Shown here: piece by piece, positions 1,780-58,800 of the stretch | Position numbering within the stretch: the first letter of the stretch is position 1 | How the letters are laid out: each line of letters begins with the position of its first letter | Assembly: GCA_976226885.1 (NCBI GenBank) | Contig: OZ320316.1 | Span: 76,942,001 to 77,006,000 of the forward strand | Direction of reading: 5' to 3' | Length of the DNA: 64,000 nucleotides | Source of the DNA: Iphione sp. A-MEVVRFRX5 | Lineage: Eukaryota | Notes under the pieces: model-generated | Told to the model about the DNA's origin: nothing | Database searches by the model: none | Seen by the model: only the letters and a program-made list of their open reading frames with translations | Program-made: the position numbers and the translations under genes

Positions 1780-1832
<53 letters not shown>

Positions 1833-1835
1833 GAC

Positions 1836-1866
<31 letters not shown>

Positions 1867-34800: not shown

Positions 34801-37800
34801 TATTTGAATTTACCAAAATTACCAAGTGTAATGAGTCCATGTACATAACTATCATATATCAAAATCAGTTCATTTGAATGAAGGGTTTGAGAGTTATAAG
34901 ACCCACAAGAGTGTGACAGCAGCATTCCTAAGGTCCCCCCTCTCTATGAGGCGGGGGAATATAATGGACTGGAAGGTTCCATTTGCAACTGCCATTGCTA
35001 TAGTGAGTCAATAACAATGGATACACACCGGAAAAAGTGATGTTATATCTCATGGGTTATTCTCTTAAAGTTGTGAATTATCTCTCACCTTATGCTGGTC
35101 CACCTGGTGGCGTAGCCGCTCCAGGTCACCTCCGACTCGTTGTTTGGCCCGCAGTTCGCCCTCCGCCTCTGAGACCCAGGTGTCAAATTTACCGCACTCG
35201 CCATTGAACTTGACTAATTCGTCATGTACTGATGTAAGCGTCTTTACGCGGCTCTCGCTCTCACCAAGCAACTGTAAAAGCCCCAAAAACACTCTTTACA
35301 ATACGTCGGGGAAGAAAATTAGCAACGTTACTGGAGTAATAGAAACGCAATGGAGAATAAAAAATATGCCCCGGGATATTCATAAACATAAATTTATCAC
35401 GTGGGCTAAACAAATGCATCATGCTGCTATTCAAATCGAAATTTACAATGTATATTTTGGGAGGTCTCTCCCTGATAGCAGTTGTTTTACAAACCGATTC
35501 GAGCTTCTTTCGTACGTCCACAGAGAGTTTATCTAGTTTGTTGAGCTGCTCCTCGGTGAAGTCAGGTTTATTATGTTCGAGCAGCTGTTGGGCCTGGTAG
35601 ACTAGCGACAGGATTGGATGTTGGTGATTCACGATCTCACTATACAAAGCCTGCCATGAGGAGAACAAAACGCAGTTGAATGTTTGGGAATTAAGTAAGC
35701 CGCTACCTTTGAGTCATATTTATGGCAATTTAAAGTTTACAAGGTATATTTCAGCTTGTCGTATATCACTCTCATGGTTGAAGACGAAGAAATAATTATT
35801 AAAATTCTTGCGAATGCGCCTACATGATGAAAACAGGCGTACCTTTTGGTCATCTACTTGTCGCTGTAGCTCGGCTTCATTTTCGCTGGCCGCGCTCTGT
35901 CGGAGCAGCTCCTGTTCGGCATCTCCTAGCCAGTTGCGCTGGTTACGCAGGTCCCGCGTGAGCTGCTCGTACAACTCATCCAACTTAACCTAATAAATCA
36001 CAACAAACTAATTAGCCTGTATGTCCACGTGTACTTAGACGATAGTCCCATAAATTATTGGAAATAGACATGCTATCTTTACTTCGTTTAATGAAAGTGA
36101 TAATATTTGTAAAAAGCAGAAAAAAGGACAGTGAAAATTTGACGTTATCAAACGTGAAAATCCACGGAGTCAAATTTATCGGGGTGTTTTGATGGGATAC
36201 TGGGCGTCTTGATTCAGGTTAATCCCCCACCACTGCGAGACCTGACCCATGTGCTGCTTTACATTATGTCTGCCAGTGTGAAAACCATAGTGGAGTGCTC
36301 GTGGATATCATTTACTTCGTATTTCATTATGAATTATTTAACCGTTGAATTACAAAGATTTTTAATCTAAAGGGTAGCAGTCCATCATGTTTTCCCCACA
36401 ATTTACCACAGAGGATACCTGCAAGTAATTTTACTTCAAGGAAAATCAATCTGACTTAGAGGGAAAAATTGAAGGATTATTCACTGCAAGTTGATCATTT
36501 CGGAATGGTCAATGGGCCTCGACAAGGACACCTAACCTGGAAGTGTTGTATGGCAATTGGAAGCGCAGCAAGGTTGGTGGATTGGGAAATGAACGAGGAG
36601 ATTAGCAAAGCGCCATTAAAAGTTTGGTGGTAGTGATAATTAATTACTCTAGAATGTTACAGCAGCATTAGTATACATTCATCAATATGCGCATATTACC
36701 ATTGCATTACTGATGGAAACATGTTAAGATCGTAAAAATAATTGTGTATACAGGACTTAACTTTAACGATAAAAAATGTTTTATACAGTTAGGTTTCAGG
36801 CAAGAGGCATGAATCAACTATAAGATACATCAGTTCTTAATTAAAAGTAAGTGATAATTGCACATAGATATGCTAGTTCCCTCTTTCAGGGGTCTTAGCA
36901 AAACGCTAGTTCCCTCTTTTAGGGGTCTTAGCCAAACACAACACACAATTAACTCAATGGCAAGTGTCATACACAAAATTCATTTCAGCGCCTGCAAGCT
37001 TTGCTTTTTGAAAAATCAGTTTAAAGAGTTACGTGTACATGACAAAATTAGTGTCGTTTGTCAGCTGCAAGCAGACATGCTAATTTTCAATGCCTGGTTC
37101 AGGACTCATGCTACGCGAAGGTTGTATTGTGGGTACTGACATGCGTATTAGTGTATAATTAGGTATACATGTAATGTGAAGAGGATGACGTCATTTTCTT
37201 TATCTGCGTCTGTCTTTTAAGGTTCGGTTCAGAGAACGTGTTAACTGGCAGCTCATTATACTGACGATTTCTCCAGGGGGTTATTAATGACATGTATGCG
37301 GGCATCAAATAAAACAAGATACCAAGAGACATACAAACAGTATATGTGTGAAACATTGCATTATAAAGGAGGGAGGGGAGCAGCTGAAAACGGAAAGAGA
37401 TTCATTGAGGCAGTTAGTTTAATTCCTGCTATAAAAAAGATGGACAACCACATTTACTGAAAATAAGGTGTGCAGTCGTGCATAAAAACGATGAACACTT
37501 GCCATGAATTTAGGAACCGTCTCATCAGACGGTTGCCCATAAACAAACAATGGAATCACAAACATACATGGAAGGACAGGACACAATTATTTTGGTAGGG
37601 TACAATGTAGCCTTGTCTCATAAGCCTATGTAGCTCGAAACTCACCCGAACCACACAACTTAAAATATATAAACAAAGGCGAAGGGAAGAAACATTCAAG
37701 ACAAGATGATCAACCACAGACAGTCCCGTATAAACATTCGTATTTGTTGTGCTTCATTACAGTCCACAAGTAAACAGAATAAAGTACAGAAGTAAAGGAA

Positions 37801-40800
37801 CTGTAATATTTTGTAAGTGTTAAAAATAATATTGTAGACCCAACATATTCCACTTACAGTAAGACGAATCAAGACAATTTGAGGTCTTTTTACCCTTGCC
37901 GTTGTCTCCACTAAAACATATCAGCCATGATCTAAATGTGAGAAAATTCACATTAAGCGAACGAATTTCTCTCATCTGGAAACACCGAATATGGCTCTTC
38001 TAAATGTTAAAAAAATAATCGGCTTCATTTCAATGGAGACAATGACATTACAATGCACGTAACTATAATTCAATTTTGGCGTTGTGTAACATAACAGTCA
38101 GTCAAAATGTAATGCATTATGAATTCCGTTTCGTATAGGTAGTTTTAATGTGAGTGCGACTGTTTTTGAATGTTCAGGATTTAATGATTCACCAGGTCTC
38201 TTTGGGATTATTCATGCATAACAATCAAAATTTTTGCCACTTCAATCGGGCATGCTGATTATATCAGGGGTGATTCATTTAGTAAATCTTCATGCTTATG
38301 AACAATGTCAGGCTATCCACAATTCAAGAATCTAACACATTGGAGGGCTTAGGCAAACTCAATTCTAAGAATCTACAAAAAAGCATTCTACTAAAAGCTC
38401 TAATCTTTACTAAGGGTGCGACTTGGTTTTCTCCTTTTTGTTTAAAACTTCATATATATCTAAATGCGTATACTGGTACATGCATAATATCCACCCTACA
38501 GAATAACTATGACAGGTATTTCAGTTTGATATTGTGAAACGATTAGGAGAAGACCACACGCGACCGCGACCAAATATACATGAATTACCTATAACTAAAA
38601 TCAATAGATGAAACCAACAAATAAACATTTTGTACAGGTCAACACAAAGGTAGCGCCAGGTGTGCACCCAACAGCTAACTTCATGAACCAATCACAGAAC
38701 CGAGACACTTCGCCTGGCATGCCGTGTTCTTTGATAGGAGAAACATTGGTAACCTCGGGCAGCAGGGTGACTAACCCATGCCCGATGTGACCGACAGGAC
38801 GCACACAAAATAAGAAAAGGGGCCAAACACACGTAGGAAAATGGCCACCTTAACATCTACAGCAAGCAGCCGGCGTAGGCACGTGGATCGTACAGAGTGG
38901 ACGGTGTTAGCTGGGTTAACAGGTCCTAGCCTCTTATGAGATTATTGGTTTTCGCTGAGCTCCTCACTGCCTTAGGATTCTACCCCCATCTGCTCACTGG
39001 CTCTAGGAGAGGGACGATATCTTAAAAGGAGTAGGGGAGCATAACTTGTGGTAGGAGCCGGTCGTTACCTGGCGTGCTCTTTCTCTTTCTGGACTGGTGG
39101 CCGGACTCGGCTTCTGACCAACCACAAAGGCCACGTCGGCTTCTGGCCGCACACTCCCGACTTGGAATGATACGCCTTCTTGTGGGCCCACTTCTACACT
39201 ATCAATGACTGTCCCTGCAACCTCGTGGGCAGCAGGCAGAGCCTGGGCCGGCGACATACTGTCGATGGATTTGGCCAGGGTGCTGTCACTAGACTGTGGT
39301 GTAGTGAAACCGACGGAGATATCCTTGGTGACGTCCATCTGTTGCTCAAGTCCAGCAGTTTGAGGTAGTGGAGTCTGGGGCACGAAGGCCCCTCGGACAA
39401 TGTCCGTCTCGACTACCTTTTCGGGCGATACATCGTGTTTTCGAGGAGCCTCAAGAAGACCGGCCGTAATTGCAGCTGCTAGGTCCATTTGTTCTCCAGT
39501 GATTGGGTTGGTGTACAGACCACTTGTAGGGTTATAGTGCCCTAATTCTATAGCATCATTGATGGACAGGCGGTCAGGGATCTGGGGGGTATCATCATTT
39601 GTTTCTCGAATTAAGCCCATATCCCTCGATTGAGATAGTGGTATCATGTCACCAGTACTAGGGTCCTTCATCATACCACTACTTGGTGTAATCAACCCCT
39701 TTTTGATTGCCTCCCTAAGGGATATAAGTCGGCCTGACTCCGGGTCAAAAATCTGAGGAGTGGTGATGTCCAGGAGGCCTTTTGCAATAGCCTCAGCTAT
39801 GGTATACTTTTCACCAGCAGATGGACCCTTGATTGTGCCGGATTTTGGATCAAGGATGCCACTATCAATAGCCTCTGTTAGACTGAGACCCCTTCTTCGA
39901 CTATCTTTCCCCACTGCTCTTCTACGTCTTTCTTTCTCTAACTCGAGATCTTCAGGCTCTTTAATCAAGCCAGTCTCTAATGCCCTGTCTAATGGTATAG
40001 CCTTCTGGGTTATGGGGTCCTGCAAACACCCTGATTCGCTGTCGATAAGACCTACTTGTAGAGCTCCATTAAGGGACAAGACCCTATCTGTTTTAGGATC
40101 TAAGACCTGTGGAATATCCCCATCAAGAACATTTGATTTCACAGCTTCTAATAAAGTCACTTTAGTCCCTGTCCCAGGATCGGTAACACTGCCACTTTTC
40201 ACGTCAAAGCATCCCCTCTGCAGTGCTTCTGATAGTAACAATCCAAGTTCTGATTTTCTTTCTGTTCCCGAAATTTCACCTTTAACCTCTGAGCCAACTA
40301 CTTCCCCTTCCTTTTTATGCTCGTAGGAAAGATCACCTACAACTTCTTCTGTGGGTTGCTCAGGCGCTCCTACACTGCTGACATCTTTTGGTACCTTCTG
40401 TTCTGCAGGCACCTCCTCTAGCAAACCTGCACTGACTGCTTCACTAATACTAGACGTTTGATGTGAGACAGGATCGTTGAATCTGCCCGCTGACAGGTCA
40501 AGATATCCCAGGCCAATTGCCTCTGTGAATGTTAAGCCTGGTTTGCCTTCAACTGTTGCTGCAACGTCTTTACGTTTATCAACATCTACAGACTCTACAC
40601 CGGAAGTGATCTTTTCACCTTGATCTTTAATGTCAGACTCTATATTCCCTTCTACCATGCCTGGTTCACGTGTAGAATCCCTGGAGAATGTACCCTCCTT
40701 CATGTCACTCGGGACTTTCATACTAGGTTCAGCGCTGTGGTCCGATGAAAGGATTTCCTCGGATTTAGGCAGAATTTCTGCAACAGAGGTGTCTGTCTGT

Positions 40801-43800
40801 TCATCGTCAACGAGAACACCTGTCTTAAAATCAATGAGGCCTTGATCGAGGGCGTCTATTAGAGGCATTGATCTCTTCGTCTTCGGATTAGTTACAGTCG
40901 AGTCACCATTCAGCAGGCCATTTATTACAGCATTTGGTATTGAATATTGTTTCCCTGTTTCTGGATCAACTATCATACCCGTGCTTCCGTCCAACAGACC
41001 GAGTTCAATTGCTTTAGCAAGGCTTAGACCTCTGTGTGACTCCACAGGAACAATGTTACCATTTGCCCGCGCTGTGTCCAGGTATAACCTTTTTCCCGTA
41101 GTTGGATCTCTCATTGTTCCCATTCTACCACTGATGACTCCCTTATCAATCGCCTCACGAAGGCCTATCACATCACCACTTGCTGGATCCACAACCTCTG
41201 GCTTAGAACCATCAAGAAGGCCACAGTTAACAGCTTCTTCCACTGTCAGTAACTTTCCGCTTCTCGTATCCTGTATCTTGCCAGACTCCATGTCGTACAA
41301 ATTTTGATCGAGAATATCACAAACCGTAAGACCCGGTTTGACCTGCGCAGCAACAATCATTCCCTTTTTCTGTGCTTTACCAAACGGAATGCCCTGGTCT
41401 GTGACAGGATCTTTCACGAGGCCAGCTGACGAATCTATGAAGTCAGTTCTTAAAGCATCTCTTAGGCTAAGAATATCTCCCGATAAGGGGTCTACAATGG
41501 CGGAGGCAGTCTCCGACAACAAGCCATTAGCTGCAGCCTCAGCAACAGTACACTGCTCTCCCGTCACAGGATGCCGAAGCATTCCTTTTACAGGGTCTAG
41601 TATGCCTTGGTCTAAAGCCTCCTCTAACGTTAAGTTTTGTGCTTTTTCATCCGAACTCGTGTCATTACCACTAGTTTTCTCTTCTGGGGTGGCTGATACC
41701 AAATCAACAGGCCATGACTGAGATGTTTCAGGGATAGAAATTGCAGTACCCTTTATTAAAGCTTCAGCCAGAGTCATATCCTTACCTGTCACTGGATCTG
41801 TGACTTTATTCGTTTTCTTGTCAATTGTACCTTTCGCTATCGCATCATTCAAACTTATCTGTTCGCCCTTTGTGTTATCGATGATACAGGGTGTACTGCC
41901 ATCAAGGAAACCAGATTGGATCGCATCGACCACGCTGATGTCCTTTCCACTCCTAGGGTCTATTATCTGGCCCGTGTTAGGATTGATTAGATCCTTTTCT
42001 ATGACCTCTGTTACAGTTATAGCTGGCTTTATAAATGCTTCCTCAGGGAGTGCCTTTCTAAGCATCTCTATGATGCTGATTTCCTTTCCAGTGTTTGGAT
42101 CGATGATTTGTCCGGTTTCTTCATTGATCAAGCCCAGATGAATGGCCTTATTCAAAGTGATGCCTTCTCCAGTTCTTCCATCATAGAAACACGGTATGCT
42201 ACCATCCACTAGGCCTAATGCAGCTGCTTCAGAAAGATTATGTTCTTTACCAGTCTTAGGATCTCTTACCTTCCCTGTTTTGGGATCTATCAATCCTTCA
42301 GTTAGGCCCATTTTCAGTAAAGTTCCTAGTACAACTTCCTTTCCAGTCACTGGGTCTTGAGCTTTGCCTGTTTCACCATCTATGATGCCTCCCTTGACTG
42401 CCTCATTCAAACTGATTTTATCCCCAGTTCTTCTATCTTGAAAACATGGTACATTACCATCGATAAGACCTAATGCAATTGCTTGAGAGAGACTGTATTC
42501 TTTACCATTCACAGGATCTGTTATCATGCCTGTTATTGGATTTATCAATCCCTTTTCTAATACTTCTGTAATGGTCATGCCTGGTCTCTTGGGCTCTTCT
42601 TCTTCAATGAGGACTTTCTTCACTAATTCAGCTAATGTCACTTCTTTTCCAGTTGTTGGATCTTGACACTTTCCTGTCTCACCATCTACAATGCCTTTCT
42701 TGATTGTCTCATTCAAACTAATTTCATCTCCAGTTCTTCGATCATGAATACAAGGTGCATTACCATCCACAAGGCCTAATGCAATTGCTTGAGAGAGACT
42801 GTATTCTTTACCATTCACAGGATCTGTTATCATGCCTGTTATAGGATTTATCAATCCCTTCTCTAATACTTCTGTAATGGTCATTGCTGGTTTCTTGGGC
42901 TCTTCTTCTTCAACGAGGTCTTCCTTCACTAATTCAGCTAATGTCACTTCTTTTCCAGTTGTTGGGTCTTGATACTTTCCTGCCTCACCATCTACAACGC
43001 CTTTCTTGATTGCCTCATTCACACTGATTTCATCTCCAGTTCTTCTATCATGAATACATGGTGCATTACCATCCACAAGGCCTAATGCAATTGCTTGAGA
43101 GAGACTGTATTCTTTACCATTCACAGGATCAGTTATCATGCCTGTTATAGGATTTATCAATCCCTTCTCTAATACTTCTGTAATGGTCATTACTGGTCTC
43201 TTGGGCTCTTCTTCTTCAATGAGGTCTTCCTTCACTAATTCAGCTAATGTCACTTCTTTTCCAGTTGTTGGGTCTTGACACTTTCCTGTCTCACCATCTA
43301 CAACACCTTTCTTGATTGCCTCATTCAAACTAATTTCATCCTCAGTTCTTCTATCATGAATACATGGCGCACTACCATCCACAAGGCCTAATGCAATTGC
43401 TTGAGAGAGACTGTATTCTTTACCATTCACAGGATCTGTTATCATGCCTGTTATTGGATTTATCAATCCCTTTTCTAATACTTCTGTAATGGTCATGCCT
43501 GGTCTCTTGAGCTCTTCTTCTTCAATGAGGTCTTCCTTCACTAATTCAGCTAATGTCACTTCTTTTCCAGTTGTTGGATCTTGACACTTTCCTGTCTCAC
43601 CATCTACAACACTTTTCTTGATTGCCTCATTCAAACTAATTTCATCTCCAGTTCTTCTATCATGAATACAAGGTGCATTACCATCCACAAGGCCTAATGC
43701 AATTGCTTGAGAGAGACTGTATTCTTTACCATTCACAGGATCTGTTATCATGCCTGTTATAGGATTTATCAATCCCTTCTCTAATACTTCTGTTACAGTC

Positions 43801-46800
43801 ATAAATGGTTTCTTTAGTGACACTGCTTTGACTAAATCCTCCTTTAATAAACCAACTAGTGACACCTCTTTTCCAGTCGTTGGGTCTTGACACTTCCCTG
43901 TCTCTCCATCTATGATTCCTTTTTGGATTGCCTCATTCAAACTGATGTCATCTCCAGATCTTCCATCATGGATGCACGGTTGGTTGCCATCTACCAATCC
44001 TATGTCTAATGATTCTGAAAAGCTGTACTCTTTATTATTTGTTGGGTCTCTAACTCTTCCTGTTTGTACATCCATTAACGCTGCTTCTAACATATGTGTT
44101 ATAGTGAAAGGACGCCTCAATACAGTTTGCCCAATAACTTCTGCTTCTTTATCATCCATATCACTGCTCTTCTGAATTTTCCCTTTTTCTACTTCTTCAT
44201 CAATCCTGGCTTGGCTTTCCTCCTGGGTTGACTCTGGCCATGAAGCTTCATCGGGTTCTTTGATTTTGCTTCCAGGTTCTGGGCCACTAGTAGTTGGGAA
44301 TCGTTGCAACATTGTGTGGACAGGTACCTGGCCTTCTGTAGACATGTCGTATATAAGACCTGTGGCGCCATCCACAATACCAGAGGAAATTGCATCTATG
44401 AGGCTCAGATTTTCTCCAGATGCTGTATAAATTTGGCTTCGTTCTCCATCAACAATACCACGTTCTACTGCTTCTCCCAGACTGTACTGCTTTCCATCTA
44501 CTGGATTGGTCATGAGACATGAGACGGGATCGAAAAGACCTTTTTCCACAGCAGTTGAAAACTCCATTCCTAGTTTCTGTTCAGAGATAGAGCCAGAACT
44601 GATAGCTTCTGTTAGTGGTATTTCTTCAGTGTCCGTTCCTTTTAAGTGTCCAGTATCTGGATCTATTAACCCTGTATCGATGGCCTTCTTAAGACTAACA
44701 TATTGACCAGAGTGTGGATCTGAAATCTGTGGTGCAGTAGAGTCAAGTATACCAAGTTCAATTGCCTTCTTAATGTCGTGCTTTTCACCACTAATTGTAT
44801 CCAGTATCTCCCCCGTCTTTGGGTCCAGAATTCCCTGCTGAAGTGCTTCAACAATGCTTATCCCTGGCAATTCATGAAGGATATGCTTTTCTTTGGCATC
44901 TTGAAGGGTAATCGTATTGCCAGTGCTAGGATCCACAATTTGTCCTGTTGACGGATCGACCAGCCCTTTCCGGAGAGCTTCCACAAGACTAACTCTCTTA
45001 CCTGTTTCAGGATCAACTACCTGTGCAGTTGTACTATCCAGAAGGCCTAGTTCTACAGCATCAAGCAGGGGCAACTTCTTTCCCGTCTGTGGGTCTGTCA
45101 CCAGTCCTGTGGTACTGTCAAATAGACCATCAGTGACTGCTGCCAGCAAGGTGAGTTTCTGAACGGAGCCCTGAGGTTTGGAGATATGGCCGTGACGTTT
45201 AGCTCTAGTGAGCGTCATTGGACCTGTTTCAGGATGGATGAACAGACTTTTGTTTACGTCAAAGAGAGACTCCTTGATTGCTTGATGAATTGATATTCGT
45301 TCTTTGCGAATTGGATGGACAACCTCCTGTAAGGTTGCATTTAAGAGCCCACATTCTACTGCTTCACACAAGGTACAGTCTACACTATTACTCGGATCTG
45401 TGATTTTACCAGCTGATGAGTCATACAGTCCCAGAGTCAACGCATCAACAAGAGACATTCCAAATGGTTCACCTTTCATTTCATATGGTGGGAAACCTTC
45501 CCTACGTTTTGCTTTTTCTGTCAACACAGGCTTCTGTGGCTCTTTGTACCCAAGTGTAAGTTCGGGCCTCTCAAAACCACCTAATCCGACAACGGGAGGT
45601 GTTTTTGCTGGCTTTGTTTCTGCTGGGAATGACCCGTCCTTGTCTTGTGTGCTCACCTGTGTGTCTTCAATTGATAATTTCACGTGTGGCTCCTGTTTTG
45701 ATGCTAGTTCTCGTGCAACCCATCCTAGGACATATCCAAGAGCAACAGCGTGATCCAATGGAATGTGCTCTCCCGACTCAGTTGCTAACAGACCTGTTTG
45801 ACCATCAATCAACCCATCCTCGATGGCCTTTTGAAGTGTCAACGTCTCGCTAGTGGTAGGGTTCTTTATGTTGCTGTTGTCTGCATCAATGATGGCGGGT
45901 ATAGCCTCTTTTAGTGTCAGCTTCTCCTTGGTTGATGGGTTTATGAAGAGTCCAGTGTCTACATCATAGAGACCTCGAGCCAGCGCTTCGTGCAGTGGTA
46001 GAGGTCGGTCAGCTGTTATAATGATCCCCTGTTTTACTGCATCAGCAAATGTGATAGACAGTCCTTCTTCTTTGCCATTATATCTCCCTGTCCTGCCGTC
46101 GATTATTTTCTTGTTGAGTGCTTCTTCGAGAGACATGAGTTTCCCTGTTTTTGGATCTTTCACTGCTGTATTTTCCGTATTGATGACACCTTTTTCCACA
46201 GCACTTTGCACGCTCATTTGCTCCAATGTTACTGGATCTGTCACTATATCCCCGTCTATCAAACCTTCATCTACTAGTACTTGCGGATTCAGACCGCCTT
46301 TGGCAGGTCTCCGTGGGTGAAGGATTTGCTCAGTAGCCGATGGTTTTCTCTCCACAGCCTCCATTATAGGAATTTCGGTCACGTCCTCCTGAGTTATGTC
46401 TTCTTCCTTTGAGAGATCTTCAATGTTCAAGCCCTTCTCTATTAGTAGCTGTACTTGTGTCTCTGTAGCCTCAGAAATAATCAGGCCCTTTTGTAAACAT
46501 TCCAGTAGTGGGATACTCTCTCTGTGCATAAAATCATGGTAATGACCTGTCATGAGGTCGACTATACCTTCATCGATAGCATCAGGCATCCGGACGAACT
46601 CGCCACTTACAGGATGCTTGACTAGCATCTCGGTGGGGTCGATAATGCCTTCTTCAATGGCCTTTTCCAGGTTTATCTCAGGAAGATTGCCGTATGCTGA
46701 TGACACTCTGTGATGAATTTCCATCGTGTTCTTTCGTGACAGCTTTCTTCGCAAAAGCTTACGCTTGTCTTCCTCTGGCTGTGTTCCAGTGACCAGCAAA

Positions 46801-49800
46801 TCTTTCGCAAAGACCTCGCTCATCACAAGCTGACCAGAGTGGCTGGTGTCCTCTAGACTCACAATGCCCTTTTTAATAGCTTGATCAAGGGGCAAAGTTG
46901 TACCAGTGACAACATCTTTAAATTCGCTCAAACTTGCATTAATGAGTCCAATTTCCAAAGCATCTTTTAACGGCATCTTCTGGCGAGTTGTTGGGTTCTT
47001 TATGATACCTGTGCTTGGGTCAAACAATTTCGCCGCTTTTGCCTCTTCCACGCTCCTTGTCTTATCCTTGTCTGTTAGAAGGACCAAACTCCTGTCAATT
47101 GCATCTGGTAAAGTAATGCTTTCAGGTGACATGCCACAATACCTTCCCGTTTGAGAGTCGATCAATCCGCTCTCTAAAGCTTGATGCAAAGGTACAAGCG
47201 AACCATCCTCCATGTCTTTTACAACAACAGAATCTGGCTTAAGAATGTTTCTTCTGATAGCTTCAGCTAAGCTATAGTCTTTTCCATTTAGTGGATCTCT
47301 TATTGATCCTGTCTTCACAATGAAGTGCCCTGACTGAAGTAGTTCATGGAAAGTCTGAGATTTTCTAGTTTTGCGCGGCATTTCCTCCAAGTCACTCTCA
47401 GGCCTAGAGGCTGCCACATGCTCTGGTGTGCCCATCTCTTCAACTCGTTCGGGATCTCTGACTGCTGCTTGACGACTATCTTGCAAAAATATTCCGTCGC
47501 CGTAATTTTCAATGGTTTGAGATACATCTTCTTTGATTGTTACAGGTGCAACATCTACTTCATCCTCGTGATGATCAGCTTCCGGCAAAGAATGATCCTT
47601 TGCCACCGCCACAATGTGCGACATTGTCGTGTCAGTAGATGACCTTCCTTTTCTGGCACTATCTTGTTGACGTATTTCATCTGCTTCTTCTTTTGCTACA
47701 AGTTGATACTTTTCTTCCACAGCAGCATGCTTTTCTGTTGATTTCACAAACTCTACTTTCTCAGCTGTTGGCTTCATCGAACCAGATTCTATGTCACCTA
47801 TCAACGTAGGAGTTTCTTCAACCACTCCTGGACTTGACTGGGGCGGTGATTCAACCCCAATAACATACCTGTCTTGGTCAGCAGTTTCTCCTGTCGTCGG
47901 ATCTTTCGCTAGTACATGTATTTTTTTCAGACCCGTGTCCGCCTCTATTGTGGTCTCTGAAGCAGGAGCCGCGGGTTCTTTTTCAACATGTGCATCTTTT
48001 TCAGGCAACAATCCCGTTACAAGGGCTTCGGGAAGATCCACTAATTGGCCGGTTGATGGATTTTTAATCTGTCCAGAAATGGAGTCGATGAAACCCTCTG
48101 CTAAAGCTTCATCAACTGTTAATTTCCTATTGGAAGCAGGATCGACAACTAGTACGCTATCCTTATCAATGAGTCCAAAATTGATCCCCTCGCTCATGGT
48201 CAACTCTTTCCCTGTTGCTGGATGAACAAACCTTTTGGACACGGGATTATACCATCCATCTTCTAGGATCTCTTGTACGCTCCTTGGTTCGTATGTCCCT
48301 TCAATGACAATACCTTTCGTGATACTATCAGTAAATACTCGTTCTTTATCCTGTTCCAGTACTCCAGTATCTCTGGGCAAGATTTGCTCTCTCCTTTCCT
48401 GGTCTTTACCTTCGACTTCCTGTTCCTTTTCTTTGAACACGGGGCCAAGAGCGGCAAGAGAAACTGCTCCCATGCCCTCTCCAACTAATTTTCCTGTCTG
48501 ACTAATATCTTCCAGCAGGCCTTCTGCAAATGCTTCTTCTATGGTGCAGCTTTTACCTGTCAATTTGTCGCAGACCTGTCCTGTCCTTGAGTCTAGGAGT
48601 CCCTTATCAATGGCTTTATCTAACTGGAATTTCTCCCCTGTACTTGTGTTTTTGACAAGGGTACTGCTGTTATCAATTAGTTTACTGTTTAACGCTGCAC
48701 TGATGTTGACTTCATTGCCACTTCTCGGATCAAACACCTTCCCTTGGGCATGGTTGAACAAACCTATCCCTATGACTTGAGACAGACTTAAATTGTCTTT
48801 CTGTTCGATTTCTACTAAACATCCGATCATTTTATCCACAGGAATTAATTGTCCACGTGCGTCACTCATCTTCGCTGTTTTACCATCGATCAAACCTTGC
48901 TGTACGGCGTCTTCTAGTGGTACAAGATGACAATCTTTAGGATCTCGAACAAAGGTGTTATTTGTATCTAACACTCCAGCTGAGATGGCATTTTCAAGTG
49001 TCGTTTGTTGGCCGGACTTTGGATCTGTGATGGTGCCGTTTTCTTTATCAATATAGCCTTGATCAAAAGCTTCTTTTAACGACATGTTACCTGGTGTAAC
49101 AACGATGTCTCTGTTGAGCGCTTCAACTATATCAAGAGGCTGTCCGCTGGAAATTCCATATACTACACCCAAATCAGGATTCAGTAGTCCTGTTCTGGTA
49201 GCTTCTGATGGGCTCATAAGCTTTCCTGTTCTTACGTCCCTGACTTTAAAGGTTGATTCATCGATGATGCCTTTTGTGATAGCCTCCCCTAGCGTTAGTT
49301 GTTCGCCGGATCGCACATCGGTTACCTTTCCAGTTTTAGGATCAAGGAGGCCCTTGTTGACAGCTTTAGTGAGACTCATTTTCATGGCTATGCCTTCACT
49401 TGGCTGCAACTGGAAGATTTCGGTTTTTGAGGTCGGGGTGTATATGGGTTGAATTGGCTTGTCCTGTACTATAGCCCCCAAATCTTCAGACTCAGTCATC
49501 GGTTTTGCAGGTTTATCGGTTACCTGGCCTGCCTTTTCATACTCCTGTAAGCCAGCTGGAAGTATGGGCCGTCTTTCTGGAGTAGTCGCAACTTCTTTAT
49601 CATCCATAGTTTCTTCTGCATATTTTGGCTTTTCGTTCAGCTTTCCTGTTTCTAACACTGCTACATGTCTTTCGGCTGATCCCATCTGTTGTTCTGTAGT
49701 ACTCTCCCTCAATTCCCCTACTCTGCCTTCCTCTTTTACTTCTGCCTTGTCCTTGTCTTCTTCTGGTCTTCCTTTGTACGCTGGGATCATCTCCTCTGTC

Positions 49801-52800
49801 AGTGGCACATATCCTCCGTCAGGACCTTTCACAAGGCCTGTAATTGGATTCAGGGTCCCTATATGAATAGCCGCGTTCACACTGATCACCCTGCCTGTTG
49901 ATGGCTCTATGATTAAACTACTTTCGCCATCGAGTACACCAGAAAAAAGTGCTTCTTTCATAGTTATCTTTCTACCACTGTACAGATCGACGACTTCTCC
50001 AGTTGTTGCGTCAAACACTCCATCACTCAGTGCCTTTTCTAAAGTGAGACCCACTGGAGACACCTGGCGTTTGTCAGAATCTGACAATATGCCTTTGTTT
50101 TTAGCCTCCTCGAAGTTGATCAGTTTTCCTGACTTAGGGTCTATGACTGCACCTTTGTCAACATCAACGATTCCTTTCCTGATGGCATCCGTTAGAGGGA
50201 TAAACTGACCTTCCAGAGGATCTTTTACCAACGTTTTCGTGGGGTCTATCAGCCTTTTCTCAATGGCTTCATTGATCGTTAGTTCTTTCTTCTCGATAGG
50301 GTCAACGATCTTTCCAGTATCTGCACTGTACATCCCTTCATTCAATGCTTGCAGTAATGTTCTTGCTTCACCCTGAGCCGTTTCATCGATGAGAACATCT
50401 CCAGGCGAGACTCGTTCTAGGACTCCTTCTTCAATGGCACCCTCTAGTGATATGACTCTACCAGTACTGGGCTCTCTGATGGTAGATCTGGAGCTATCTA
50501 TTATACCTAGCTGTACAGCTTCTGTAATAGTCAGTTCGGTTCCTGACACGGGGTGAGTGACCTTTCCAGTGTGCGTATCTAGAAGGCCATGCTGTGCTGC
50601 CTGATCTAGAGTCATGTTTGGATGTCTGGAGTTTACTATGAGATTCTTGCTGAGAGCCTTCGTGAGAGTTACTGGTTTTCCTGTCTCACCATCTATCACC
50701 GTCCCTGTTCCTATATCAACGATACCGCTCACTAGAGCATCAGTAAAGGGAATAAAGTCTCCCTCTTTGCCTTTAACAAGTGTTCTGGTGGGATTCAGCA
50801 GGCCCTTTTCAAGGGCTTTAGCTAGTGTGAGCACCTCCTCGGTCCCAGGGTCTGTTATGAGCATGGTTTCCGGATTGTACATTCCGAGTTTCATCATTTC
50901 ATCGAGACTGTAACTTTTGCCCTTTCCGCTGACGTCGATGATATCCAGAAGTCCTGCATTGAGAGCTTCGTGGAAACCGAGACTCTTCCCAGTAGCAGGA
51001 TCTCGTACTTTGCCATTTGTTCCATTTATCAAGTTTTCTCTCACCGCTTCGGCAATAGTGATTTCCGTTCCAGTAGCAGTATCGCGTACCACTGATTTTG
51101 GGTCGAGTAGCCCATTTTCAAGTGCTTCTTTGATAGTGTGCTGTTCCCCTGAAATTGCATCTACAATTTTTCCGGTGGTAGGATTAAAAAGCCCTTGATC
51201 AACAATTTGGTCCAAGGATAGTGTGGGGCGGTGCTTTCTAATATCTTGAGCCGCCTGTGCTGCGTCAACAAGAGAATATTTCTTTCCGGTGTTCCTGTTT
51301 ATGACAGACCCAGAGTCCGTGTCTACTGTGCCACTTTCAACTGCCTCTTTCAATGATACCGGCTCGTGTGTTGCTGGGTCAATTATTTCGGAATTGTCTG
51401 CATCGATTATAGACTTTGATATAGCTTCTGTAATAGACACTACTTCTCCGGTATTTGGGTCTGTAATTTTTCCGGTTTCCGGATCATATAATCCTCGTTC
51501 AATTATGGATGACAGGGATTCTGGCTTCTTCTCGCGTGTTTCTATGATGATTCCCTTCTGTAAGGCAGCAACAAGTGATACATGCTTGCCATCTTTATCC
51601 ATCACAGTTCCTTTATTTTTGTCAATGATGTTCCTCTCGATAGCTTCAGGCAGCGGGAGCATGCCTTCACCCTGTGGGTCTTTAATAGAAACGGACCCAG
51701 CATCTATTACACCAGAAACCATAGCTTCCTCTAGAGACAACGATCTTCCCGATGTTAGATCCTTCACTTGGTTTCCATCAAAAATAAGTCCTTGTTTGAT
51801 GGCCTCCACAAATGTCATGGACAACTGGTTGTCTAGGAACTCCACAACAGGGGTAGACCCGCCAGTCAGTGGATTGACAACATTTCCATATGCTAGGTCG
51901 ACTATCCCACTCTGCATTGCACCCTGAAGTGATATGGTGTCCTCAGTACCGGGGCATCTAATCAGAGTTCTGTTGGGGTCGATGAGGCCCGCACTGATCG
52001 CATCTGTCAGACTGTGGGTGTTGTTGGTCACCGGATCGCTCACCATGCCCGTCTTGGGATCGTACAATCCTTTCTCCATGGCTTCCCGAAGGCTTAGTGC
52101 AGTCTGTTTTTTGGCGGGTTCTGTCGGAGGTTCTAGTATGAGACCATACTTCAGGGCCTCTTCAAGGGATCTGTCATGGCCCGCTAAGCGGTCTTGTACC
52201 CTGCCTGTTTCTTCATCGATCAGCTTCCCCTCAATAGCCTCGATTAGTGGTAGTGCCTCATCTGATTGCGTATCTTTGACCATGACCTTTGCGAGATCAA
52301 TCACGCCGGCGTCTATAGCTTCTCGCAAGGGTAGCAACCGACCGTAGTTGGGGCCTGGCCTGGGATCACGGATCTTTCCCAATTCAATCAGACCTTGGTC
52401 AGCAGCTTGGTTAAGAGACATGCTCTGTTCAAGTGATGTGACTAGAAGGTGCTTCAGAATGGCCTGACCTAGACTGAGAGGTCTACCACTATGCGGATCC
52501 TCCACTGTACCATCTTCGGTATCAATGAGGCAGCTCTCAACAGCATCTTCAATAGTCAGCTCTGCCCCGCTGTGCGGGTCACAAATCCTGGATTTGCTAG
52601 CATCAACTAGTCCCGAATCGATTGCTTCCTGTACTGTCAACTGTTGACCAGAGTCCGGATGGGTGATCTTCCCTGTGTCTGGATTGTAGAGGCCTTGTTG
52701 TACAGCGTCGGTGAGACTTAACCCAATTACTTTGGAAGCAACGAGCGCTAAACCGCCGAGAATAGCCTCTTTGAAGGTTAGTGTGTCACCTTCAGGACTG

Positions 52801-55800
52801 ATCACATCCCCTGTATTTGGATCGAGTATTTCCTTGTCAATAGCCTCTTCCATTGTAAGCAATTTGCCACTCTCCGGATCTCTCACTTTGATCGTGTTTG
52901 GATCTATTATACCCTTTTTGGCGGCATCTTGGAAGGTCAACATTTCTTTGGTTTTGGGGTCTATGATCTTACCTGCATCTTCACTAAAGAGATCTTGTTC
53001 CAGCACCTCATTCATAGCCAATGGTTTCTTTAGAGTTTGGTCTAGTATATATTGGTTTTGAGCTGCTTCACTGAGAGTCTGTACCTGACCATCTTCACCT
53101 TCTATCACACCAGTCTGAGGATCAAACACCTTTCGGAGAATTGCCTCCTCCAGTCCAATCTTTTCATCGGTTTTGGGATCTCTGATCTGGGAACGTTCTG
53201 GGTCGATTAGTCCCGTCTGAATGGCCTCCGCCACTGTCAGTTTCACCCCTGTTACGGGGTCTATTAATGACCCCGTCTCTTCATAATAGAGGTCTGCTTT
53301 GATGGCGTCAAGCAGGCTTAGACCAGGCCGGTCAACGTTTACGATAAGATCCCTTGCCAAGGCCTGTGCAGCGTTCACTTGATTCTGCGTCTGCGAGTCA
53401 ACGATCGAGCCAGTCTGTGGATCAAAGACACCTTCAAAAATGGCATCTTCTAAGTTCAGGATTCTTCGGCTGTCTGGTTCCATGATGAGGCTTGCCGCAC
53501 TGTCGATTACACCATTGTCAATGGCCTCCTTGAGTGACATTGGTTGTCCTGATGCCGGATCTATGACCTTTCCCGTATCAGGATCAAAGGCCCCGGAGGT
53601 CAAGGCGTAATGAAGGGTCATGCCCGCCTCAGATAGCACCTCTTCTGTCTGCAGCGAGTCAAGCAGGCTGATCTCTTCTCCGGTTTGCTTGTTCTGGATG
53701 GTACTTGTCTGTAGATCAATCAACCCGTCTTGAATGGCATTATCCAATGTCACATCCCCCACCCATGGAACGTGCACAATGGTACTGGCACCATCGATAA
53801 GTCCACTCTGAAGAGCTTCAACAACAGTGATATCTTTCCTCGTGTCTGGGTCTCTGATGGTTCCATCTTTATTTACCAGCCCTTCTGAGACGGCGTCCTG
53901 AAGTGTTCTTCCTTGTTTGGCCGGTTCTACATCTATGATTTTTCCACCTGCGACCGCATGTCCAAGGCTTGTAGGAAGCCCCGTCTTCAAATCGATAAGG
54001 TTTCCACGTTCTGGATCAATCATTCCTTGTTTAATAGCATCATTCAATGAAATAATATTCCCGCTAGGGTGCTGTACGATCCCTGATTTGTCAGGATCAA
54101 TCAGATTGCAGCTTATGGCTTGTTGTACTGTCATTGACTCTCCTGTCTGTGGATCCTTTATGGTGCCATCAACGGCATTGAAGAGACCCTGTTCTACAAT
54201 ATCCGCTAGGCCCATGCCCTCTGTTTCCTCTTCAGACTGAGATGCCACTGCAACATCAACGTAAATGCCCCTTTCCAGTGCCTCCTTCAGTGACAATGGC
54301 TTTCCCATTTCAGCGTGCAAGAAAGAGCCGCTTCTTGGTTCAACATACCCTTCTGAAATACCATTTTCGAGGTCCATTGGGTGGTCAAGGCCGGGTGCGT
54401 AAATCGCAGTTCGCTTGGGATCAATAAGGCCCGAATAAATAGCCTCTTGGAGGGTTAGGACCCGACCACTCTCAGGATCTTCAATACTAGCTGTTTCAAC
54501 GTTAAACAAGCCTTCTTTTACTGCTTCATGGAGGCTCAATTCAGTTCTCGCCTGGACAGCTTCTACAACAAGTCCCTTGTCTAGCGCATCTCTTAAACTT
54601 AGGCGTTGACCAGCTGCAACATCAGACACATTACCTGTTTGGCCATTTACTAGGCCTGTGTCTATTGCCTCTTTTAGAGTGACATCAACGTCTCGCTCGG
54701 TATCTCTCACAACAACGGTTTCAGCTTTTATCAATTCCTGTTGGACTGCATCTGCGAAGTTGTATTTTTGGCCCGTAGCTGGGTCAGTAACTTGACCATC
54801 ATCCGTATTGACGACTCCCTGTTTAATGGCCTCTTCTAACGACATTGGCAAATGAGGACCCTCGACAAGCAGACCCTCCTTAATTGCAACGGCAAGACTT
54901 TGAGTAGTTCCAGTCTCTGGGTTGTAAACGGTACCGGTGCTGGCATTGATCATTCCGGTTTCAACCGCTTCATCATAGTCTATTAATTTACCAGAACGTG
55001 GATCACGGAATTTAATGGTTTCTTTATTAATGAGGCCTTGGTCCGCCGCTTCATCCAGTGTCATGACTACTAACGTCTTGGGGTGTGTTATTTGACCTGT
55101 AGACTCATTAATCAGATTCTCTTCGACTGCAGCTTTCAGTGCTATTGGGAATTCGGTAATCTCGGAATCAATCACCAGCCCCTTTTTATAGGCTTCAGAC
55201 AAGGGCGTTTCCTCTCCTGTCATGGTGTCGATAAGAATGCCCATGTTTGTATCAAAAACCCCACTTTCGATGGCATCTTCCAAAGTTATTCTCCTCCCAT
55301 CACCTGGATTTTCAATTTCTGAGTAAAGGTCCAGGAGGCCTTGCTCAACAGCAGCATCAAGTGTGAGCTCTTCCTTTGTGTCTGGATGGAGAATGGTATT
55401 TGTTTCTGGGTTGTAGTGACCATCTTTTAGGGCTTGGGACAATGTTAAAACTGATAAAGGAACCTTATCGTCTAACCCGGATTCATCAGGTAACACATCA
55501 GCCAAGGACATTCTAGTGCCCGCCTGTGAATCGAATACTACACCTGATATGATGTCCAACACACCCTGATCAACTGCTTCATTCAGTGTGACTTCTTCTT
55601 GTGTAGATGGATTCACAATGACTGACTGCGGGTCGACGATACCTCTCTCAAGGGCTTCTTTGAGTGTAACTTCTTTGTTCGTCAATGGATCTTGAACCGT
55701 GTTCCGCGCAATGTTGTAGGACCCATTGTCAATCGCTTCTGCTATGGTAAACGGCTGTTTACAAGCGCTTTCAGCCAGAGGACTGATTGAACCAGTGTTG

Positions 55801-58800
55801 ATATTTATGACTTTTCCAGTCGCGGGATCTAGTATCCTTTCGCTGATGGCTTCCTCCAGCGTCAATCGATCACCAGTAGCTGGGTCTACGATGTATGATT
55901 GTGGGTCAAGTACGCCGAGATCAATTGCCTTTCCTAATGGCACTGCCTCTTCGGATATTGGATCAATCACGGCATTAGTCTCTGAATTGAGAAGGCCTTG
56001 ACGAACGGCCTCATCGACTGTCATCCCTCCCTTTCGCCCAGCGCGCTTCCTTCGTGACTTGGTGGAATGTCTCAGAGAGAACTTCTCCCCGGTGTGAACA
56101 TTGATGACATTGCCATGCCGTGCATCCAGCACGCCACATGCTGTGGCTCGCGCTAGTGCCATCTCCTCTCCTGTGGCGGGATCTATGATGGTCGACTGAG
56201 TATCGATCAGTCCTTCCTCCATGGCTTCCTCCAGAGTAAAGAAACGGCGACAAGTTGGGTCGAGGAATTTGCATGTCACCTCATTGAAGAGACCTATGTC
56301 GATTGCTGTGGCAATGGACATTGGCCGGGCAATCATTATTCCACGATCTAATGCTTCTGTAAGTGGTATTAACTCGTGTGATGCCCTGTCCTTTAGGTAT
56401 CCGGTTTTCCCATTCACCATACCTGCTTGAATGGATTCTTTCAGATTAATTACAGCTCCACTAGCGGGATCATTGAGAACTACTGATGTGTCATCCAGTA
56501 CACCTCGGTCAATTGCTTGTTTCAGGGTGATTTCTTCTTCAGTGCTTGGGTCAATGAACTGGCCTGTGTCTACGTTGTACAGGCCATCATCGATCATATT
56601 CAGAAGTGACATTGGCTCTGCCAGCTGTTTACCTTCGTACAAATAACCCAACTCCACTGCTTTCTCCAACGGAAACTCTGTACCCTTTGAATCGGTTATG
56701 ATGCCTTGTGTGAAATCTACCAGTCCCATTTCTTTGAGTACACCCAATGGGACTATTTTGCCGGATGAAGGGTCTTGGACCATAGCGTTTTCAATGTTGA
56801 TAAGCCCTGAATCCAAAGCGGCATTCATTGTCATTCTCTGCCCCGTGCTGGGATCTGAAACCAAGTTCTTCTCCGGAATGTATATGCCACTTTTTATTGC
56901 ATCCACTATTGACACTACAAATTCTTTTCCAACCTGAGCTACACTATCTGGATGTCCCCCAGCCTCTCTGAGCAGGTCCTCTGATGAGTCCTGAATGTCC
57001 CCTCCGACAATGTCTTTTGGGGTGATGACTATACCTCGCTCAACAGCGTCTGATATTGACACCATTGCCCCCGTTGACGGGTCCTTGACCACACACTTTT
57101 CTGTGTCCACCAATCCCATGGATATGGCTTCATCTAATGACATTGTACTTCCCGTGAGAGGATCGTAGAGCGACGCTTGAGAGTCTAAAAGCTCTTTTAT
57201 CATTTCAAGCAGGTTCTCCTTTTCCTCCCCCATTGGTGTGAAATCTTCAAATTCTGTCTGTTCCGTCATTTGTGAGTCTTCCATCCGTTCATCCCTGTCA
57301 ACAATCATCTTCTGGGCTACTGCCTCTTGGAATCCTATGGGTCTCCCCACAGTTACGTCCATCAACTCCCCAGATTTGGGATCGACAAGTCCCGTGTCTA
57401 TGGCCTCTGAGAGAGGGACCTCTCTATTTGTTGACGGGTCAATCACCACCATCGATTTGGGATCGACTACTTTGGCATCGAGAGCTTCTTTAAAGGTTAA
57501 CGACCTACCTGTACTGGGAACCTTCATCGTTTTCGACTTACCATCAAAATAGCTTTCTGCAGCTTTCTTTATTAAAAGTGGCGCCAAAATCGGTGCCGCA
57601 ACCACGGCAAGCAAACCCTTCTTCACCGAATCTGCAAAAGAAACACTACTCCCTGTCCTGGTATTAGATATTCTACCTGTCTCTGGATCCATTATACCCC
57701 GTTCGAATGCTTCAGTCAGAGCTATATCCTCCCCACTGTTGGGATCATGAACCTTAACTGAAGACCTATCTACTATACCTTTCTCAATGGCTTGGAGCAA
57801 CGGATATGTTCTACCTGATGTTTCTTCTGTGACAAGCCCTGCATCAGCATCATACTGGCCGCTTCGTGCAAGTTGTTCAAGTGTGGGTACACTAGATATT
57901 TCCACAATAAGTCCTTGCTTATAGGCCTCCGCAACAGGCATAGGCTGACCTGTTTGTGTATTATATACGACGCCTTCCTCTATATTTAACACACCTCTAG
58001 CTACTGCCTCCTTCAAATCAAGTCTCTCACCAGTAGATGGGTCGGAGACCGCTGATGACTGGGCATTGATATAACCTTTATCTATGGCATCCTTTAATGG
58101 CATCTCCTCGCCTGACACCGGGTCTGTAAACCTACCGGTGTTAGTATCTATACTGCCTGATTCTAAAGCCTCAGCTAAGGACACACTTTCCTCTGGGGTT
58201 AGGGACTTACGCTTGGGAATGACTGGTATGGACAAGTCATCTCTTGTATAAGTGGTCTGTGAAACAACTGCCTCAGCCGGATCACGTTTCAGGACCTTAG
58301 CAGGAGGCTCGGCCGTATCCTCCGTACTCTCTATGATATGGAGAGGAGTGAGCTCCTTGGTTTCATGGGACACCGTGGATATATCCGACAGGGGTCGACC
58401 TTGCTCCGTGGAGGCCTGTACCAAACCAATCTGTGCGGTCTCCCCTGCAGACAAAGTTTTAGTGTCCACTGCAGGGATTAAGTCACTAGTCGGTGTATCT
58501 GTGATCCCTTGCTCTGCAGCAGTGGCTGTTTCACGCTGCTCCTTGATCAGAGGCACCTCCGGTTTAACCTGTTCTAATTCCTGTAATGCAAAGTCATTAA
58601 GTGCAACGAAAACAGTCAAGGAATATGAAAAACAGTTCACGTGGGAGTAAGTGGAGAGGTTAATTTCCTTGAAAATAAAAAGAAGCTCTTTTAACATTTT
58701 AAAGTGAAATGTCAATCACTGCATTTGTTTACACACAGATGTGCCAAGTCTGGTAGTGACATACTAAGAATACAAAACGCAAGTTCACTACAAGAATCAG

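What the first reader, a model, noticed from the sequence alone, without database searches (positions are those of the whole stretch)
39069..58580. A single 19,512-nt coding exon (6,504 aa) of plakin-like repeats
Seen: one stop-free frame between a CAG acceptor and an AG|GTAAC donor, phase 0 at both ends. Known: Shot, MACF1b and BPAG1b carry optional plakin-repeat exons ahead of the rod; from memory these are about 6-10 kb, and the largest vertebrate coding exons (titin, AHNAK) about 17-18 kb. Inference: an exceptionally large exon, skippable without frameshift, switching between an ordinary and a giant spectraplakin.
Basis: partly seen in the sequence, partly recalled or inferred. Interest (0 to 1): 0.82.

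Follow-up and report, generated by a model that had tools for sequence, protein, structure and literature searches.

The report
Giant plakin-repeat exon of a spectraplakin
A single uninterrupted 19.5-kb coding exon in a worm-like invertebrate's cytoskeleton-linker gene encodes about 56 copies of a 100-residue plakin-type module; it is the enlarged counterpart of a known optional exon in the fly gene short stop, but no RNA data could be found to show how it is spliced.

Summary
On the minus strand, 58580..39069 is a 19,512-nt frame with no stop, against 547 and 504 stops in the other two frames. It is bounded by ttacAG| and |GTAACG and is phase 0 at both ends. Pfam Plectin repeats fill it (E 1e-225 and 5e-185 for the two halves). 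The window also holds spectrin-rod, EF-hand and GAS2 exons downstream, so the gene is a spectraplakin.

The exon holds about 56 super-units of roughly 100 aa, each built from 27-aa hairpin-plus-helix modules. Insect and scallop orthologues have the same unit, with 21-35 copies in those tabulated. Tandem copies inside the exon show dN/dS of 0.2-0.65, which fits translation.

This is the counterpart of the optional 10,497-nt short stop exon, about twice as long. It is not the whole repeat region: the upstream exon, which runs off the window, is also plakin repeats. Relatives carry unbroken ORFs of 12-18.6 kb, so the size is typical of the clade rather than unique.

No RNA run was listed, so single-exon use and skipping remain inferred. 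The finding is a new member of a known kind and of moderate interest. The scan had already noted the 306-bp array and the 27-aa module on this same stretch.

The parts
39069..58580 (-). Giant plakin-repeat exon: 19,512 nt, 6,504 codons, about 698 kDa, pI 4.6, net charge -445, about 56 super-units of roughly 100 aa
58581..58824 (-). Upstream intron of 244 nt, GT...AG, 36% GC, with stops in all three frames, phase 0
   Evidence: The single ORFs P0002 and P0005 of relatives run through the equivalent position.
58825..64000 (-). Preceding plakin-repeat exon. It is open to the window's end (at least 1,725 codons) and holds 15-17 super-units.
   Evidence: It is collinear with P0001 residues 3489-4813.
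35990..39068 (-). Downstream intron of 3,079 nt, 39% GC, GT...AG
35843..35989 (-). First exon after the repeat region: 147 nt, phase 0 at both ends, the start of the spectrin rod
   Evidence: It aligns to scallop dystonin P0082 from residue 3866.
51825..58181 (-). Exon residues 134-2252. Many of these units have a closer match in relatives than among the window's own units (up to 73% identity).
41361..44105 (-). Exon residues 4826-5740. This is a lineage-specific burst of units (46-96% identical to one another) and includes the 306-bp tandem array.
42334..43970 (-). 306-bp (102-aa) tandem array of 5.3 copies with 91% matches. It is the only DNA-level repeat in the exon. dN/dS between copies is 0.19-0.65.
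47352..48011 (-). Exon residues 3524-3743: an E/A/V/D/T/S-rich stretch, the largest one without a full unit, probably a disordered linker
32848..34272 (-). Large spectrin-repeat exon of the rod (context)
6869..10036 (-). EF-hand and GAS2 (GAR) exons (context that identifies the gene as a spectraplakin)

Best explanation
This is a real, translated exon of a spectraplakin gene (the shot / MACF1 / dystonin family) from a lophotrochozoan, probably an annelid. [quoted passage not shown] The exon is spliced in through the AG at 58582-58581 and out through the GT at 39068-39067, both in phase 0. It adds about 56 compact modules of roughly 100 aa. Each module has three beta-hairpins with short helices, that is, plakin repeats shortened to 27 aa. 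The modules are joined by short linkers and a few acidic, probably disordered stretches, and together they make a very long, strongly acidic 'beads on a string' insert of about 700 kDa. By analogy with Drosophila Shot and mouse MACF1b, I infer that the repeat region is included in some isoforms and left out of others. Under that reading the giant isoform would be directed to cell junctions, or in an animal with cytoplasmic intermediate filaments to those filaments, while the short isoform would act as the usual actin-microtubule linker. Shown here: the frame, the splice signals and phases, the domain content, the unit architecture, the coding constraint, and conservation of giant ORFs in relatives. 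Inferred: expression, use as one exon, skipping, and cellular role.
For: There are no in-frame stops in 6,504 codons against 547 and 504 off-frame (chance about 1e-171), and a codon-position GC pattern holds in every bin. The acceptor and donor are canonical and in phase 0, as are the neighbouring exons. Pfam Plectin scores 1e-225 and 5e-185. The same gene has spectrin exons and EF-hand and GAS2 exons. A 27-aa period and a unit of about 100 aa run from residue 134 to 6322, and 45 units align almost without gaps at 21-40% identity to the reference unit. The unit profile finds 57 copies in Paralvinella P0001 and 21-35 in the insect, crustacean, arachnid and mollusc shot/MACF1/dystonin proteins tabulated. 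Tandem copies differ mostly at synonymous sites, with dN/dS of 0.19-0.65. Relatives have unbroken plakin-repeat ORFs of 12.0-18.6 kb. One of them lies directly upstream of a spectrin ORF. The first third of the exon is collinear with them. The known precedent is the shot exon of 10,497 nt, which is optional and gives junctional isoforms (PMC2173965). A review states that all spectraplakins splice in an internal repeat region (10.1101/122010).
Against: There is no transcript evidence at all. No RNA run was listed, and a search of 1.84 billion representatives found nothing above 52% identity, so no public protein or transcript of this species was seen. Internal splice sites, which the fly paper reports for one EST, cannot be excluded. 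In relative L002 the repeat region is split into three exons with introns in phases 1, 1 and 0, so exon structure and 'skippability' are not conserved. The repeat region is strongly acidic, which sits poorly with intermediate-filament binding through a basic groove as in vertebrate plakin repeat domains (that mechanism is from my own knowledge).
Confidence: 0.8

Rival explanations
1. The exon is real and coding but constitutive. All long transcripts would carry it, and the phase-0 symmetry would be incidental.
For: No skipping junction has been observed. The neighbouring upstream exon is also plakin repeats, so this exon alone is not the switch. In relative L002 the largest repeat exon is phase 1 to 0 and could not be skipped alone.
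Against: In Drosophila and mouse the internal repeat region is optional. RefSeq models of many arthropods list isoforms of different lengths.
Confidence: 0.25
2. The open frame is used piecemeal. Internal donors or acceptors, or in-frame 'exitrons', would produce a family of shorter repeat regions, so the 19.5-kb stretch is rarely or never one exon in mature mRNA.
For: The fly paper reports an EST that splices the 5' end of the large exon to the downstream spectrin exons. Relatives place introns at different points of the repeat region.
Against: The whole length is kept stop-free and under coding constraint. Units follow one another without intron-like gaps. No AGGTRAGT donor motif occurs in the exon, although only about 0.6 would be expected by chance, so this is weak evidence.
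Confidence: 0.15
3. It is an unexpressed relic or an assembly artefact, that is, a mis-assembled repeat array.
For: Repetitive proteins are prone to mis-assembly. The 306-bp array, with 91% matches between copies, could have a wrong copy number.
Against: Only 1.6-2 kb of the exon is repeated at the DNA level and the rest is unique sequence with no N. A relic would have accumulated stops. dN/dS is below 1. Relatives have comparable ORFs.
Confidence: 0.03

Closest known systems
Plakin-repeat exon of Drosophila short stop (Shot-PH and other 'gigantic' isoforms; Roper and Brown 2003, PMC2173965)
   Same: [quoted passage not shown] One very large exon. Repeats that keep the beta-hairpin and first helix but lose the second helix and are not grouped into 4.5-repeat domains. 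The same roughly 100-aa unit profile matches both.
   Different: 19,512 nt against 10,497 nt. About 56 units in this exon plus at least 15 in the exon before it, against about 27-28 profile hits in Drosophila proteins. The repeat region here is spread over at least two exons. Splicing and localisation were shown in the fly and have not been tested here. Annelids are expected to have cytoplasmic intermediate filaments and flies lack them (the fly point is; the annelid point is from my own knowledge).
MACF1b and BPAG1b (dystonin-b) internal plakin repeat domains of mammals
   Same: Optional repeat region spliced in ahead of the rod, giving a giant isoform.
   Different: The mammalian regions are built from canonical A/B/C-type plakin repeat domains of 38-aa repeats (five domains in MACF1b) and are far shorter. 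Here the period is 27 aa, and the predicted unit does not superpose on solved plakin repeat domains.
Giant plakin-repeat regions of other annelid-like genomes (Paralvinella palmiformis LSH36_68g10066 = P0001; unnamed ENA and Logan ORFs P0002-P0005, L001, L002)
   Same: Same unit. Repeat regions of about 4,900 to about 6,450 aa or more. Unbroken ORFs of 12-18.6 kb. The first third of this exon and the upstream exon are collinear with them.
   Different: Only 22-54% identical over 300-aa chunks. Intron positions differ. This exon is the longest of those seen, and it carries its own recent burst of about 9 units.
Other very long coding exons (titin, AHNAK, MUC16; sizes from my own memory, not checked here)
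   Same: Exons of about 17-22 kb that encode tandem protein modules.
   Different: Unrelated proteins. The comparison concerns size only.

Membership tests
Spectraplakin (shot / MACF1 / dystonin) | Spectrin-repeat rod downstream of the plakin part | tested here: met
   PF00435 scores 3e-18 on 32848-34272. Collinear tblastn matches to scallop dystonin residues 3866-7063 run across window 35986-11150.
Spectraplakin (shot / MACF1 / dystonin) | C-terminal EF-hands and a GAS2/GAR microtubule-binding domain | tested here: met
   EF-hand_1 scores 7e-6 and 7e-8. GAS2 scores 7e-7 and 1.5e-20 on exons at 9863-10036, 7905-8021, 7487-7606 and 6890-7018.
Spectraplakin (shot / MACF1 / dystonin) | N-terminal calponin-homology actin-binding domain and plakin domain | not testable with these tools
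   These lie beyond the window's end. The best homologue, P0001, carries PF00307 and plakin-domain families. Earlier notes of the scan place CH exons upstream.
Plectin/plakin repeat (Pfam PF00681) | Significant match to the family profile | tested here: met
   Scores of 729.7 and 599.4 bits against a cut-off of 20.5. phmmer to desmoplakin 5DZZ gives 2e-5.
Canonical plakin repeat domain (4.5 x 38-aa repeats, globular, A/B/C types) | 38-aa period, with a hairpin plus two antiparallel helices per repeat | tested here: not met
   The dominant period is 27 aa, with super-periods of 100-102 aa. The Pfam matches shown cover profile positions 8-34 or 8-37 of 39. The model shows a hairpin plus one 6-residue helix per module.
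Canonical plakin repeat domain (4.5 x 38-aa repeats, globular, A/B/C types) | Tertiary fold that superposes on the solved domains (1LM5, 1LM7, 4QMD, 5DZZ) | tested here: not met
   The models are confident (pLDDT 92 and 94). Foldseek ranks the plakin repeat domains first, but TM is 0.11-0.25 and rmsd is mostly above 10 A. VIA-align gives no plakin-domain match with Z of 2 or more. These are predicted models only.
Alternative (cassette) exon | Length divisible by 3, with the same phase at both ends and in the neighbouring exons | tested here: met
   19,512 = 3 x 6,504. The ends at 58825, 58580, 39069 and 35989 are all phase 0.
Alternative (cassette) exon | Transcripts both with and without the exon | not testable with these tools
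   The look-up of sequencing runs listed no RNA run, so read laying could not be used.

The most novel reading that the evidence does not exclude
Together with the upstream repeat exon or exons, this gene would encode the largest spectraplakin yet described. The window alone holds at least 8,229 aa of plakin-repeat region. With about 1,400 aa of N-terminus and about 3,500 aa of rod and tail, the protein would be at least about 13,000 aa. It would be built on a coding exon that ranks among the longest known in animals. Its repeating unit, a roughly 100-aa module with three hairpins that all protostome spectraplakins share, would be a compact fold with no solved counterpart.
Probability: 0.45. 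Interest if true: 0.5.

Novelty: new member of a known kind. Interest (0 to 1): 0.4.

Why it matters
The function of the internal plakin-repeat region of spectraplakins is still poorly understood. This clade has doubled or tripled the region, keeps it open over nearly 20 kb, and is expected to have cytoplasmic intermediate filaments. That makes it a natural test of whether the region works as a spacer or ruler, a junction-targeting module, or a filament binder. It also gives a clean set of 56 diverged copies of one confidently predicted unit for structural work. Finally, it is a caution for annotation: gene models in relatives are truncated at this region or split by it.

Tried and rejected
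(1) RNA evidence.

(2) Looking for this species' own protein or transcripts. The length-windowed search and the exhaustive representative search with a 1,200-aa piece gave nothing above 52% identity.

(3) P0181, a 7,789-aa JGI protein on a 30-kb contig, looked like a still larger repeat ORF. It holds only 4 units, so it was dropped.

The loci of P0002 and P0259 came back without DNA. Exon structure in Paralvinella could therefore not be read.

(5) Literature figures for the 'longest exon' were not found with numbers. The titin, AHNAK and MUC16 sizes remain from memory.

(6) No paper on annelid spectraplakins was found.

(7) A first 27-aa module HMM under-counted modules. The 100-aa unit profile was used instead.

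All searches were made exon by exon and by reference.
Full report
**Observation**

The window has one minus-strand ORF, 39003..58715, of 6,570 aa. Reading the ends on the minus strand shows ...gactttgcattacAG|GAATTAGAACAG, with the first exon base at 58580. It also shows ...GAGCACGCCAG|GTAACGACC, with the last exon base at 39069.

The frame has no stop, while the other two frames have 547 and 504. From the exon's own base composition, the chance of 6,504 stop-free codons is about 1e-171. GC1 exceeds GC2 in every 300-codon bin, so no intron-like island of 900 nt or more is hidden in the frame. The region holds no N. At the DNA level, only one 306-bp array (42334-43970, with diverged copies out to 42041-44125) is repetitive. 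The length is therefore not an assembly product of near-identical repeats.

**What it is**

Pfam Plectin repeat (PF00681) matches the two halves of the exon at 1e-225 and 5e-185.

- The ORF just upstream (58825 to the window's end, at least 1,725 open codons) is also Plectin, at 1e-102. It ends AGG|GTAAGA at 58825 in phase 0.
- The 244 nt between the two ORFs has 36% GC, stops in all frames and GT...AG ends.
- Downstream, a 3,079-nt intron leads to a 147-nt phase 0-0 exon at 35989-35843. After that come many exons that align collinearly with the rod, EF-hand and GAR parts of scallop dystonin and lobster shot.
- Pfam confirms Spectrin, EF-hand and GAS2 on those exons.

The gene is therefore a spectraplakin, and this exon lies where Shot, MACF1b and BPAG1b carry their internal plakin-repeat region. 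The best named homologue is a 7,866-aa model from the annelid Paralvinella palmiformis. Its residues from about 1,390 to 7,865 are all repeat region. This supports, but does not prove, an annelid origin for the window.

**Anatomy of the product**

Autocorrelation of the protein gives a dominant 27-aa period and super-periods of 100-102 aa. A profile built from the units finds 56 units in the exon, between residues 134 and 6322, and 15-17 in the upstream ORF. Forty-five units align almost without gaps over about 91 columns, at 21-40% identity to the reference unit.

The unit's consensus is a leading helix followed by three hairpin-plus-helix modules (LxxAxxxGL .. TGxxxDPxTGxxxTLxEAIxxGLxD ..). 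These are plakin repeats shortened to the hairpin and the first helix. Between some units lie acidic or Ser/Thr-rich stretches. The longest stretch without a full unit is residues 3524-3743. The exon's product is about 698 kDa, with pI 4.6 and net charge -445.

The same unit profile finds 21-35 copies, spanning about 2,200-4,350 residues, in the insect, crustacean, arachnid and mollusc shot/MACF1/dystonin proteins tabulated. It finds 57 copies in the Paralvinella protein. The architecture is therefore the general protostome one, not a peculiarity of this genome. It agrees with the description of Shot in Roper and Brown 2003: 33 repeats separated by 7-128 residues, a poorly conserved second helix, and no grouping into 4.5-repeat domains.

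**Structure**

AlphaFold2 was run with alignments of paralogous and orthologous units. It gives confident models for three units (pLDDT 92, pTM 0.61, with dips at the inter-unit linkers) and for one unit (pLDDT 94, pTM 0.83).

- Foldseek ranks the solved plakin repeat domains first (desmoplakin, envoplakin, plectin, periplakin). However, TM is only 0.11-0.25 and rmsd is mostly above 10 A.
- VIA-align finds no solved chain with Z of 5 or more, and none with Z of 2 or more for the single unit, among 48,161 representatives.
- In the ESM Atlas, the only matches at TM of about 0.5 are Plectin-repeat proteins of molluscs and rotifers.

The local motif is therefore the plakin repeat, but the predicted packing is not that of the canonical plakin repeat domain. 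This rests on predictions only.

**Is it translated?**

No RNA run could be listed for this sequence. No protein above 52% identity exists in a library of 1.84 billion representatives. The case therefore rests on sequence alone.

- The first line of evidence is the stop-free frame and the codon-position signal.
- The second is that the five close copies of the 306-bp array differ mainly at synonymous sites. Pairwise dN/dS is 0.19-0.65, and dS reaches 0.5 against the oldest copy. This is what purifying selection on this reading frame predicts.

**Relatives and the size question**

ORF calls on ENA and Logan contigs are contiguous, since gene length equals 3 x residues + 3. They show unbroken plakin-repeat ORFs in unnamed relatives of:

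- 13,083 nt (P0002);
- 14,775 nt (P0004 on L001);
- 11,970 nt (P0003 on L002);
- about 18.6 kb (P0005, 6,207 aa).

In a second assembly, the P0005 ORF appears as two abutting ORFs of 5,146 and 1,192 aa, lying 2.6 kb upstream of a spectrin ORF.

In L002 the repeat region is split into three GT-AG exons of 3,339, about 11,852 and 3,093 nt, with intron phases 1, 1 and 0. In contrast, P0002 and P0005 run straight through the position of the window's 244-nt intron. So few giant exons are the rule in this clade, intron positions are fluid, and the 19.5-kb exon is the longest seen here but not an outlier.

Chunk-wise and unit-wise comparisons show three zones:

- The upstream exon and exon residues of about 130-2,250 have one-to-one counterparts in relatives, with unit identity up to 73%.
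- Residues of about 2,250-4,700 have no clear counterpart.
- Residues 4,826-5,740 are a local burst, with units 46-96% identical to one another.

Without that burst the exon would still be about 17 kb.

**How it probably works**

Shown here: a frame-neutral, canonically bounded exon that inserts about 56 compact modules between the plakin part and the rod.

Inferred from the fly and the mouse: the repeat region is included in some isoforms only, giving a giant junction-associated isoform beside the ordinary actin-microtubule linker.

Two cautions apply.

- This exon is not the whole region, so the switch, if there is one, must skip at least two exons. The phase of the donor ahead of the block is outside the window.
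- The L002 phases show that independent skipping of the largest exon is not a conserved property.

What the region binds is open. Annelids are expected to have cytoplasmic intermediate filaments (my own knowledge), and C. elegans VAB-10A is thought to bind them through non-canonical repeats. However, the strong negative charge argues against a desmoplakin-like basic groove. A role as a long spacer or scaffold is at least as likely.

**Comparison and verdict**

The closest known thing is the 10,497-nt optional plakin-repeat exon of Drosophila shot. This exon is its counterpart in another protostome lineage. It is about 1.9 times as long, and it is part of a repeat region of at least 8,229 aa within the window.

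If the N-terminus (about 1,400 aa in P0001) and the rod and tail (about 3,500 aa by alignment to scallop dystonin) are added, the full isoform would exceed about 13,000 aa. That is larger than any spectraplakin described in the papers read here (Shot has 8,846 aa; MACF1b is about 800 kDa). This sum is an inference, and the joined model was not built or searched.

The finding is a new member of a known kind, of moderate interest. The scan had already noted the 306-bp array and the 27-aa module on this same stretch. I re-tested both here and they hold.

Noticed in passing
window 58825-64000 (-): A second plakin-repeat exon lies directly upstream. It is open to the window's end (at least 1,725 codons) and is collinear with Paralvinella P0001 residues 3489-4813. 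P0001 has about 2,080 aa more of repeat region before that point, so the repeat region of this gene probably continues well beyond the window.
   Followed up: partly
window 39615-58181 (-); models m16d338faeadf and m3432042b808e: The roughly 100-aa super-unit is predicted with high confidence (pLDDT 94, pTM 0.83). Yet no solved chain reaches Z of 2 among 48,161 PDB representatives. Only mollusc and rotifer Plectin-repeat models match in the ESM Atlas, at TM of about 0.5. It may be an unsolved fold common to all protostome spectraplakins.
   Followed up: partly
window 42041-44125 (-): A 306-bp tandem array has five close and two diverged copies. A 38-residue stretch ([38 protein letters not shown]) is identical at the protein level in four copies. 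The copies as a whole differ mainly at synonymous sites.
   Followed up: yes
window 47352-48011 (-): A roughly 220-aa stretch rich in E, A, V, D, T and S, with no full repeat unit, sits in the middle of the exon. It is probably a disordered hinge.
   Followed up: no
locus of P0002 (ENA ERZ25070167, no DNA returned): Downstream of the 13-kb plakin-repeat ORF lie two further large ORFs (1,186 aa, and 4,161 aa running off the locus) with no Pfam hit on record. It is not clear what these are.
   Followed up: no
L002:5547-25440: In this relative the repeat region is in three exons (3,339, about 11,852 and 3,093 nt) with intron phases 1, 1 and 0. Intron positions and phases in the repeat region are therefore not conserved with the window.
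   Followed up: partly
and one search hit lists: Many RefSeq insect isoforms start only about 100-170 residues before the repeat region and lack the CH and plakin domains. This suggests a promoter just upstream of the repeat exon in arthropods. It was not examined here.
   Followed up: no
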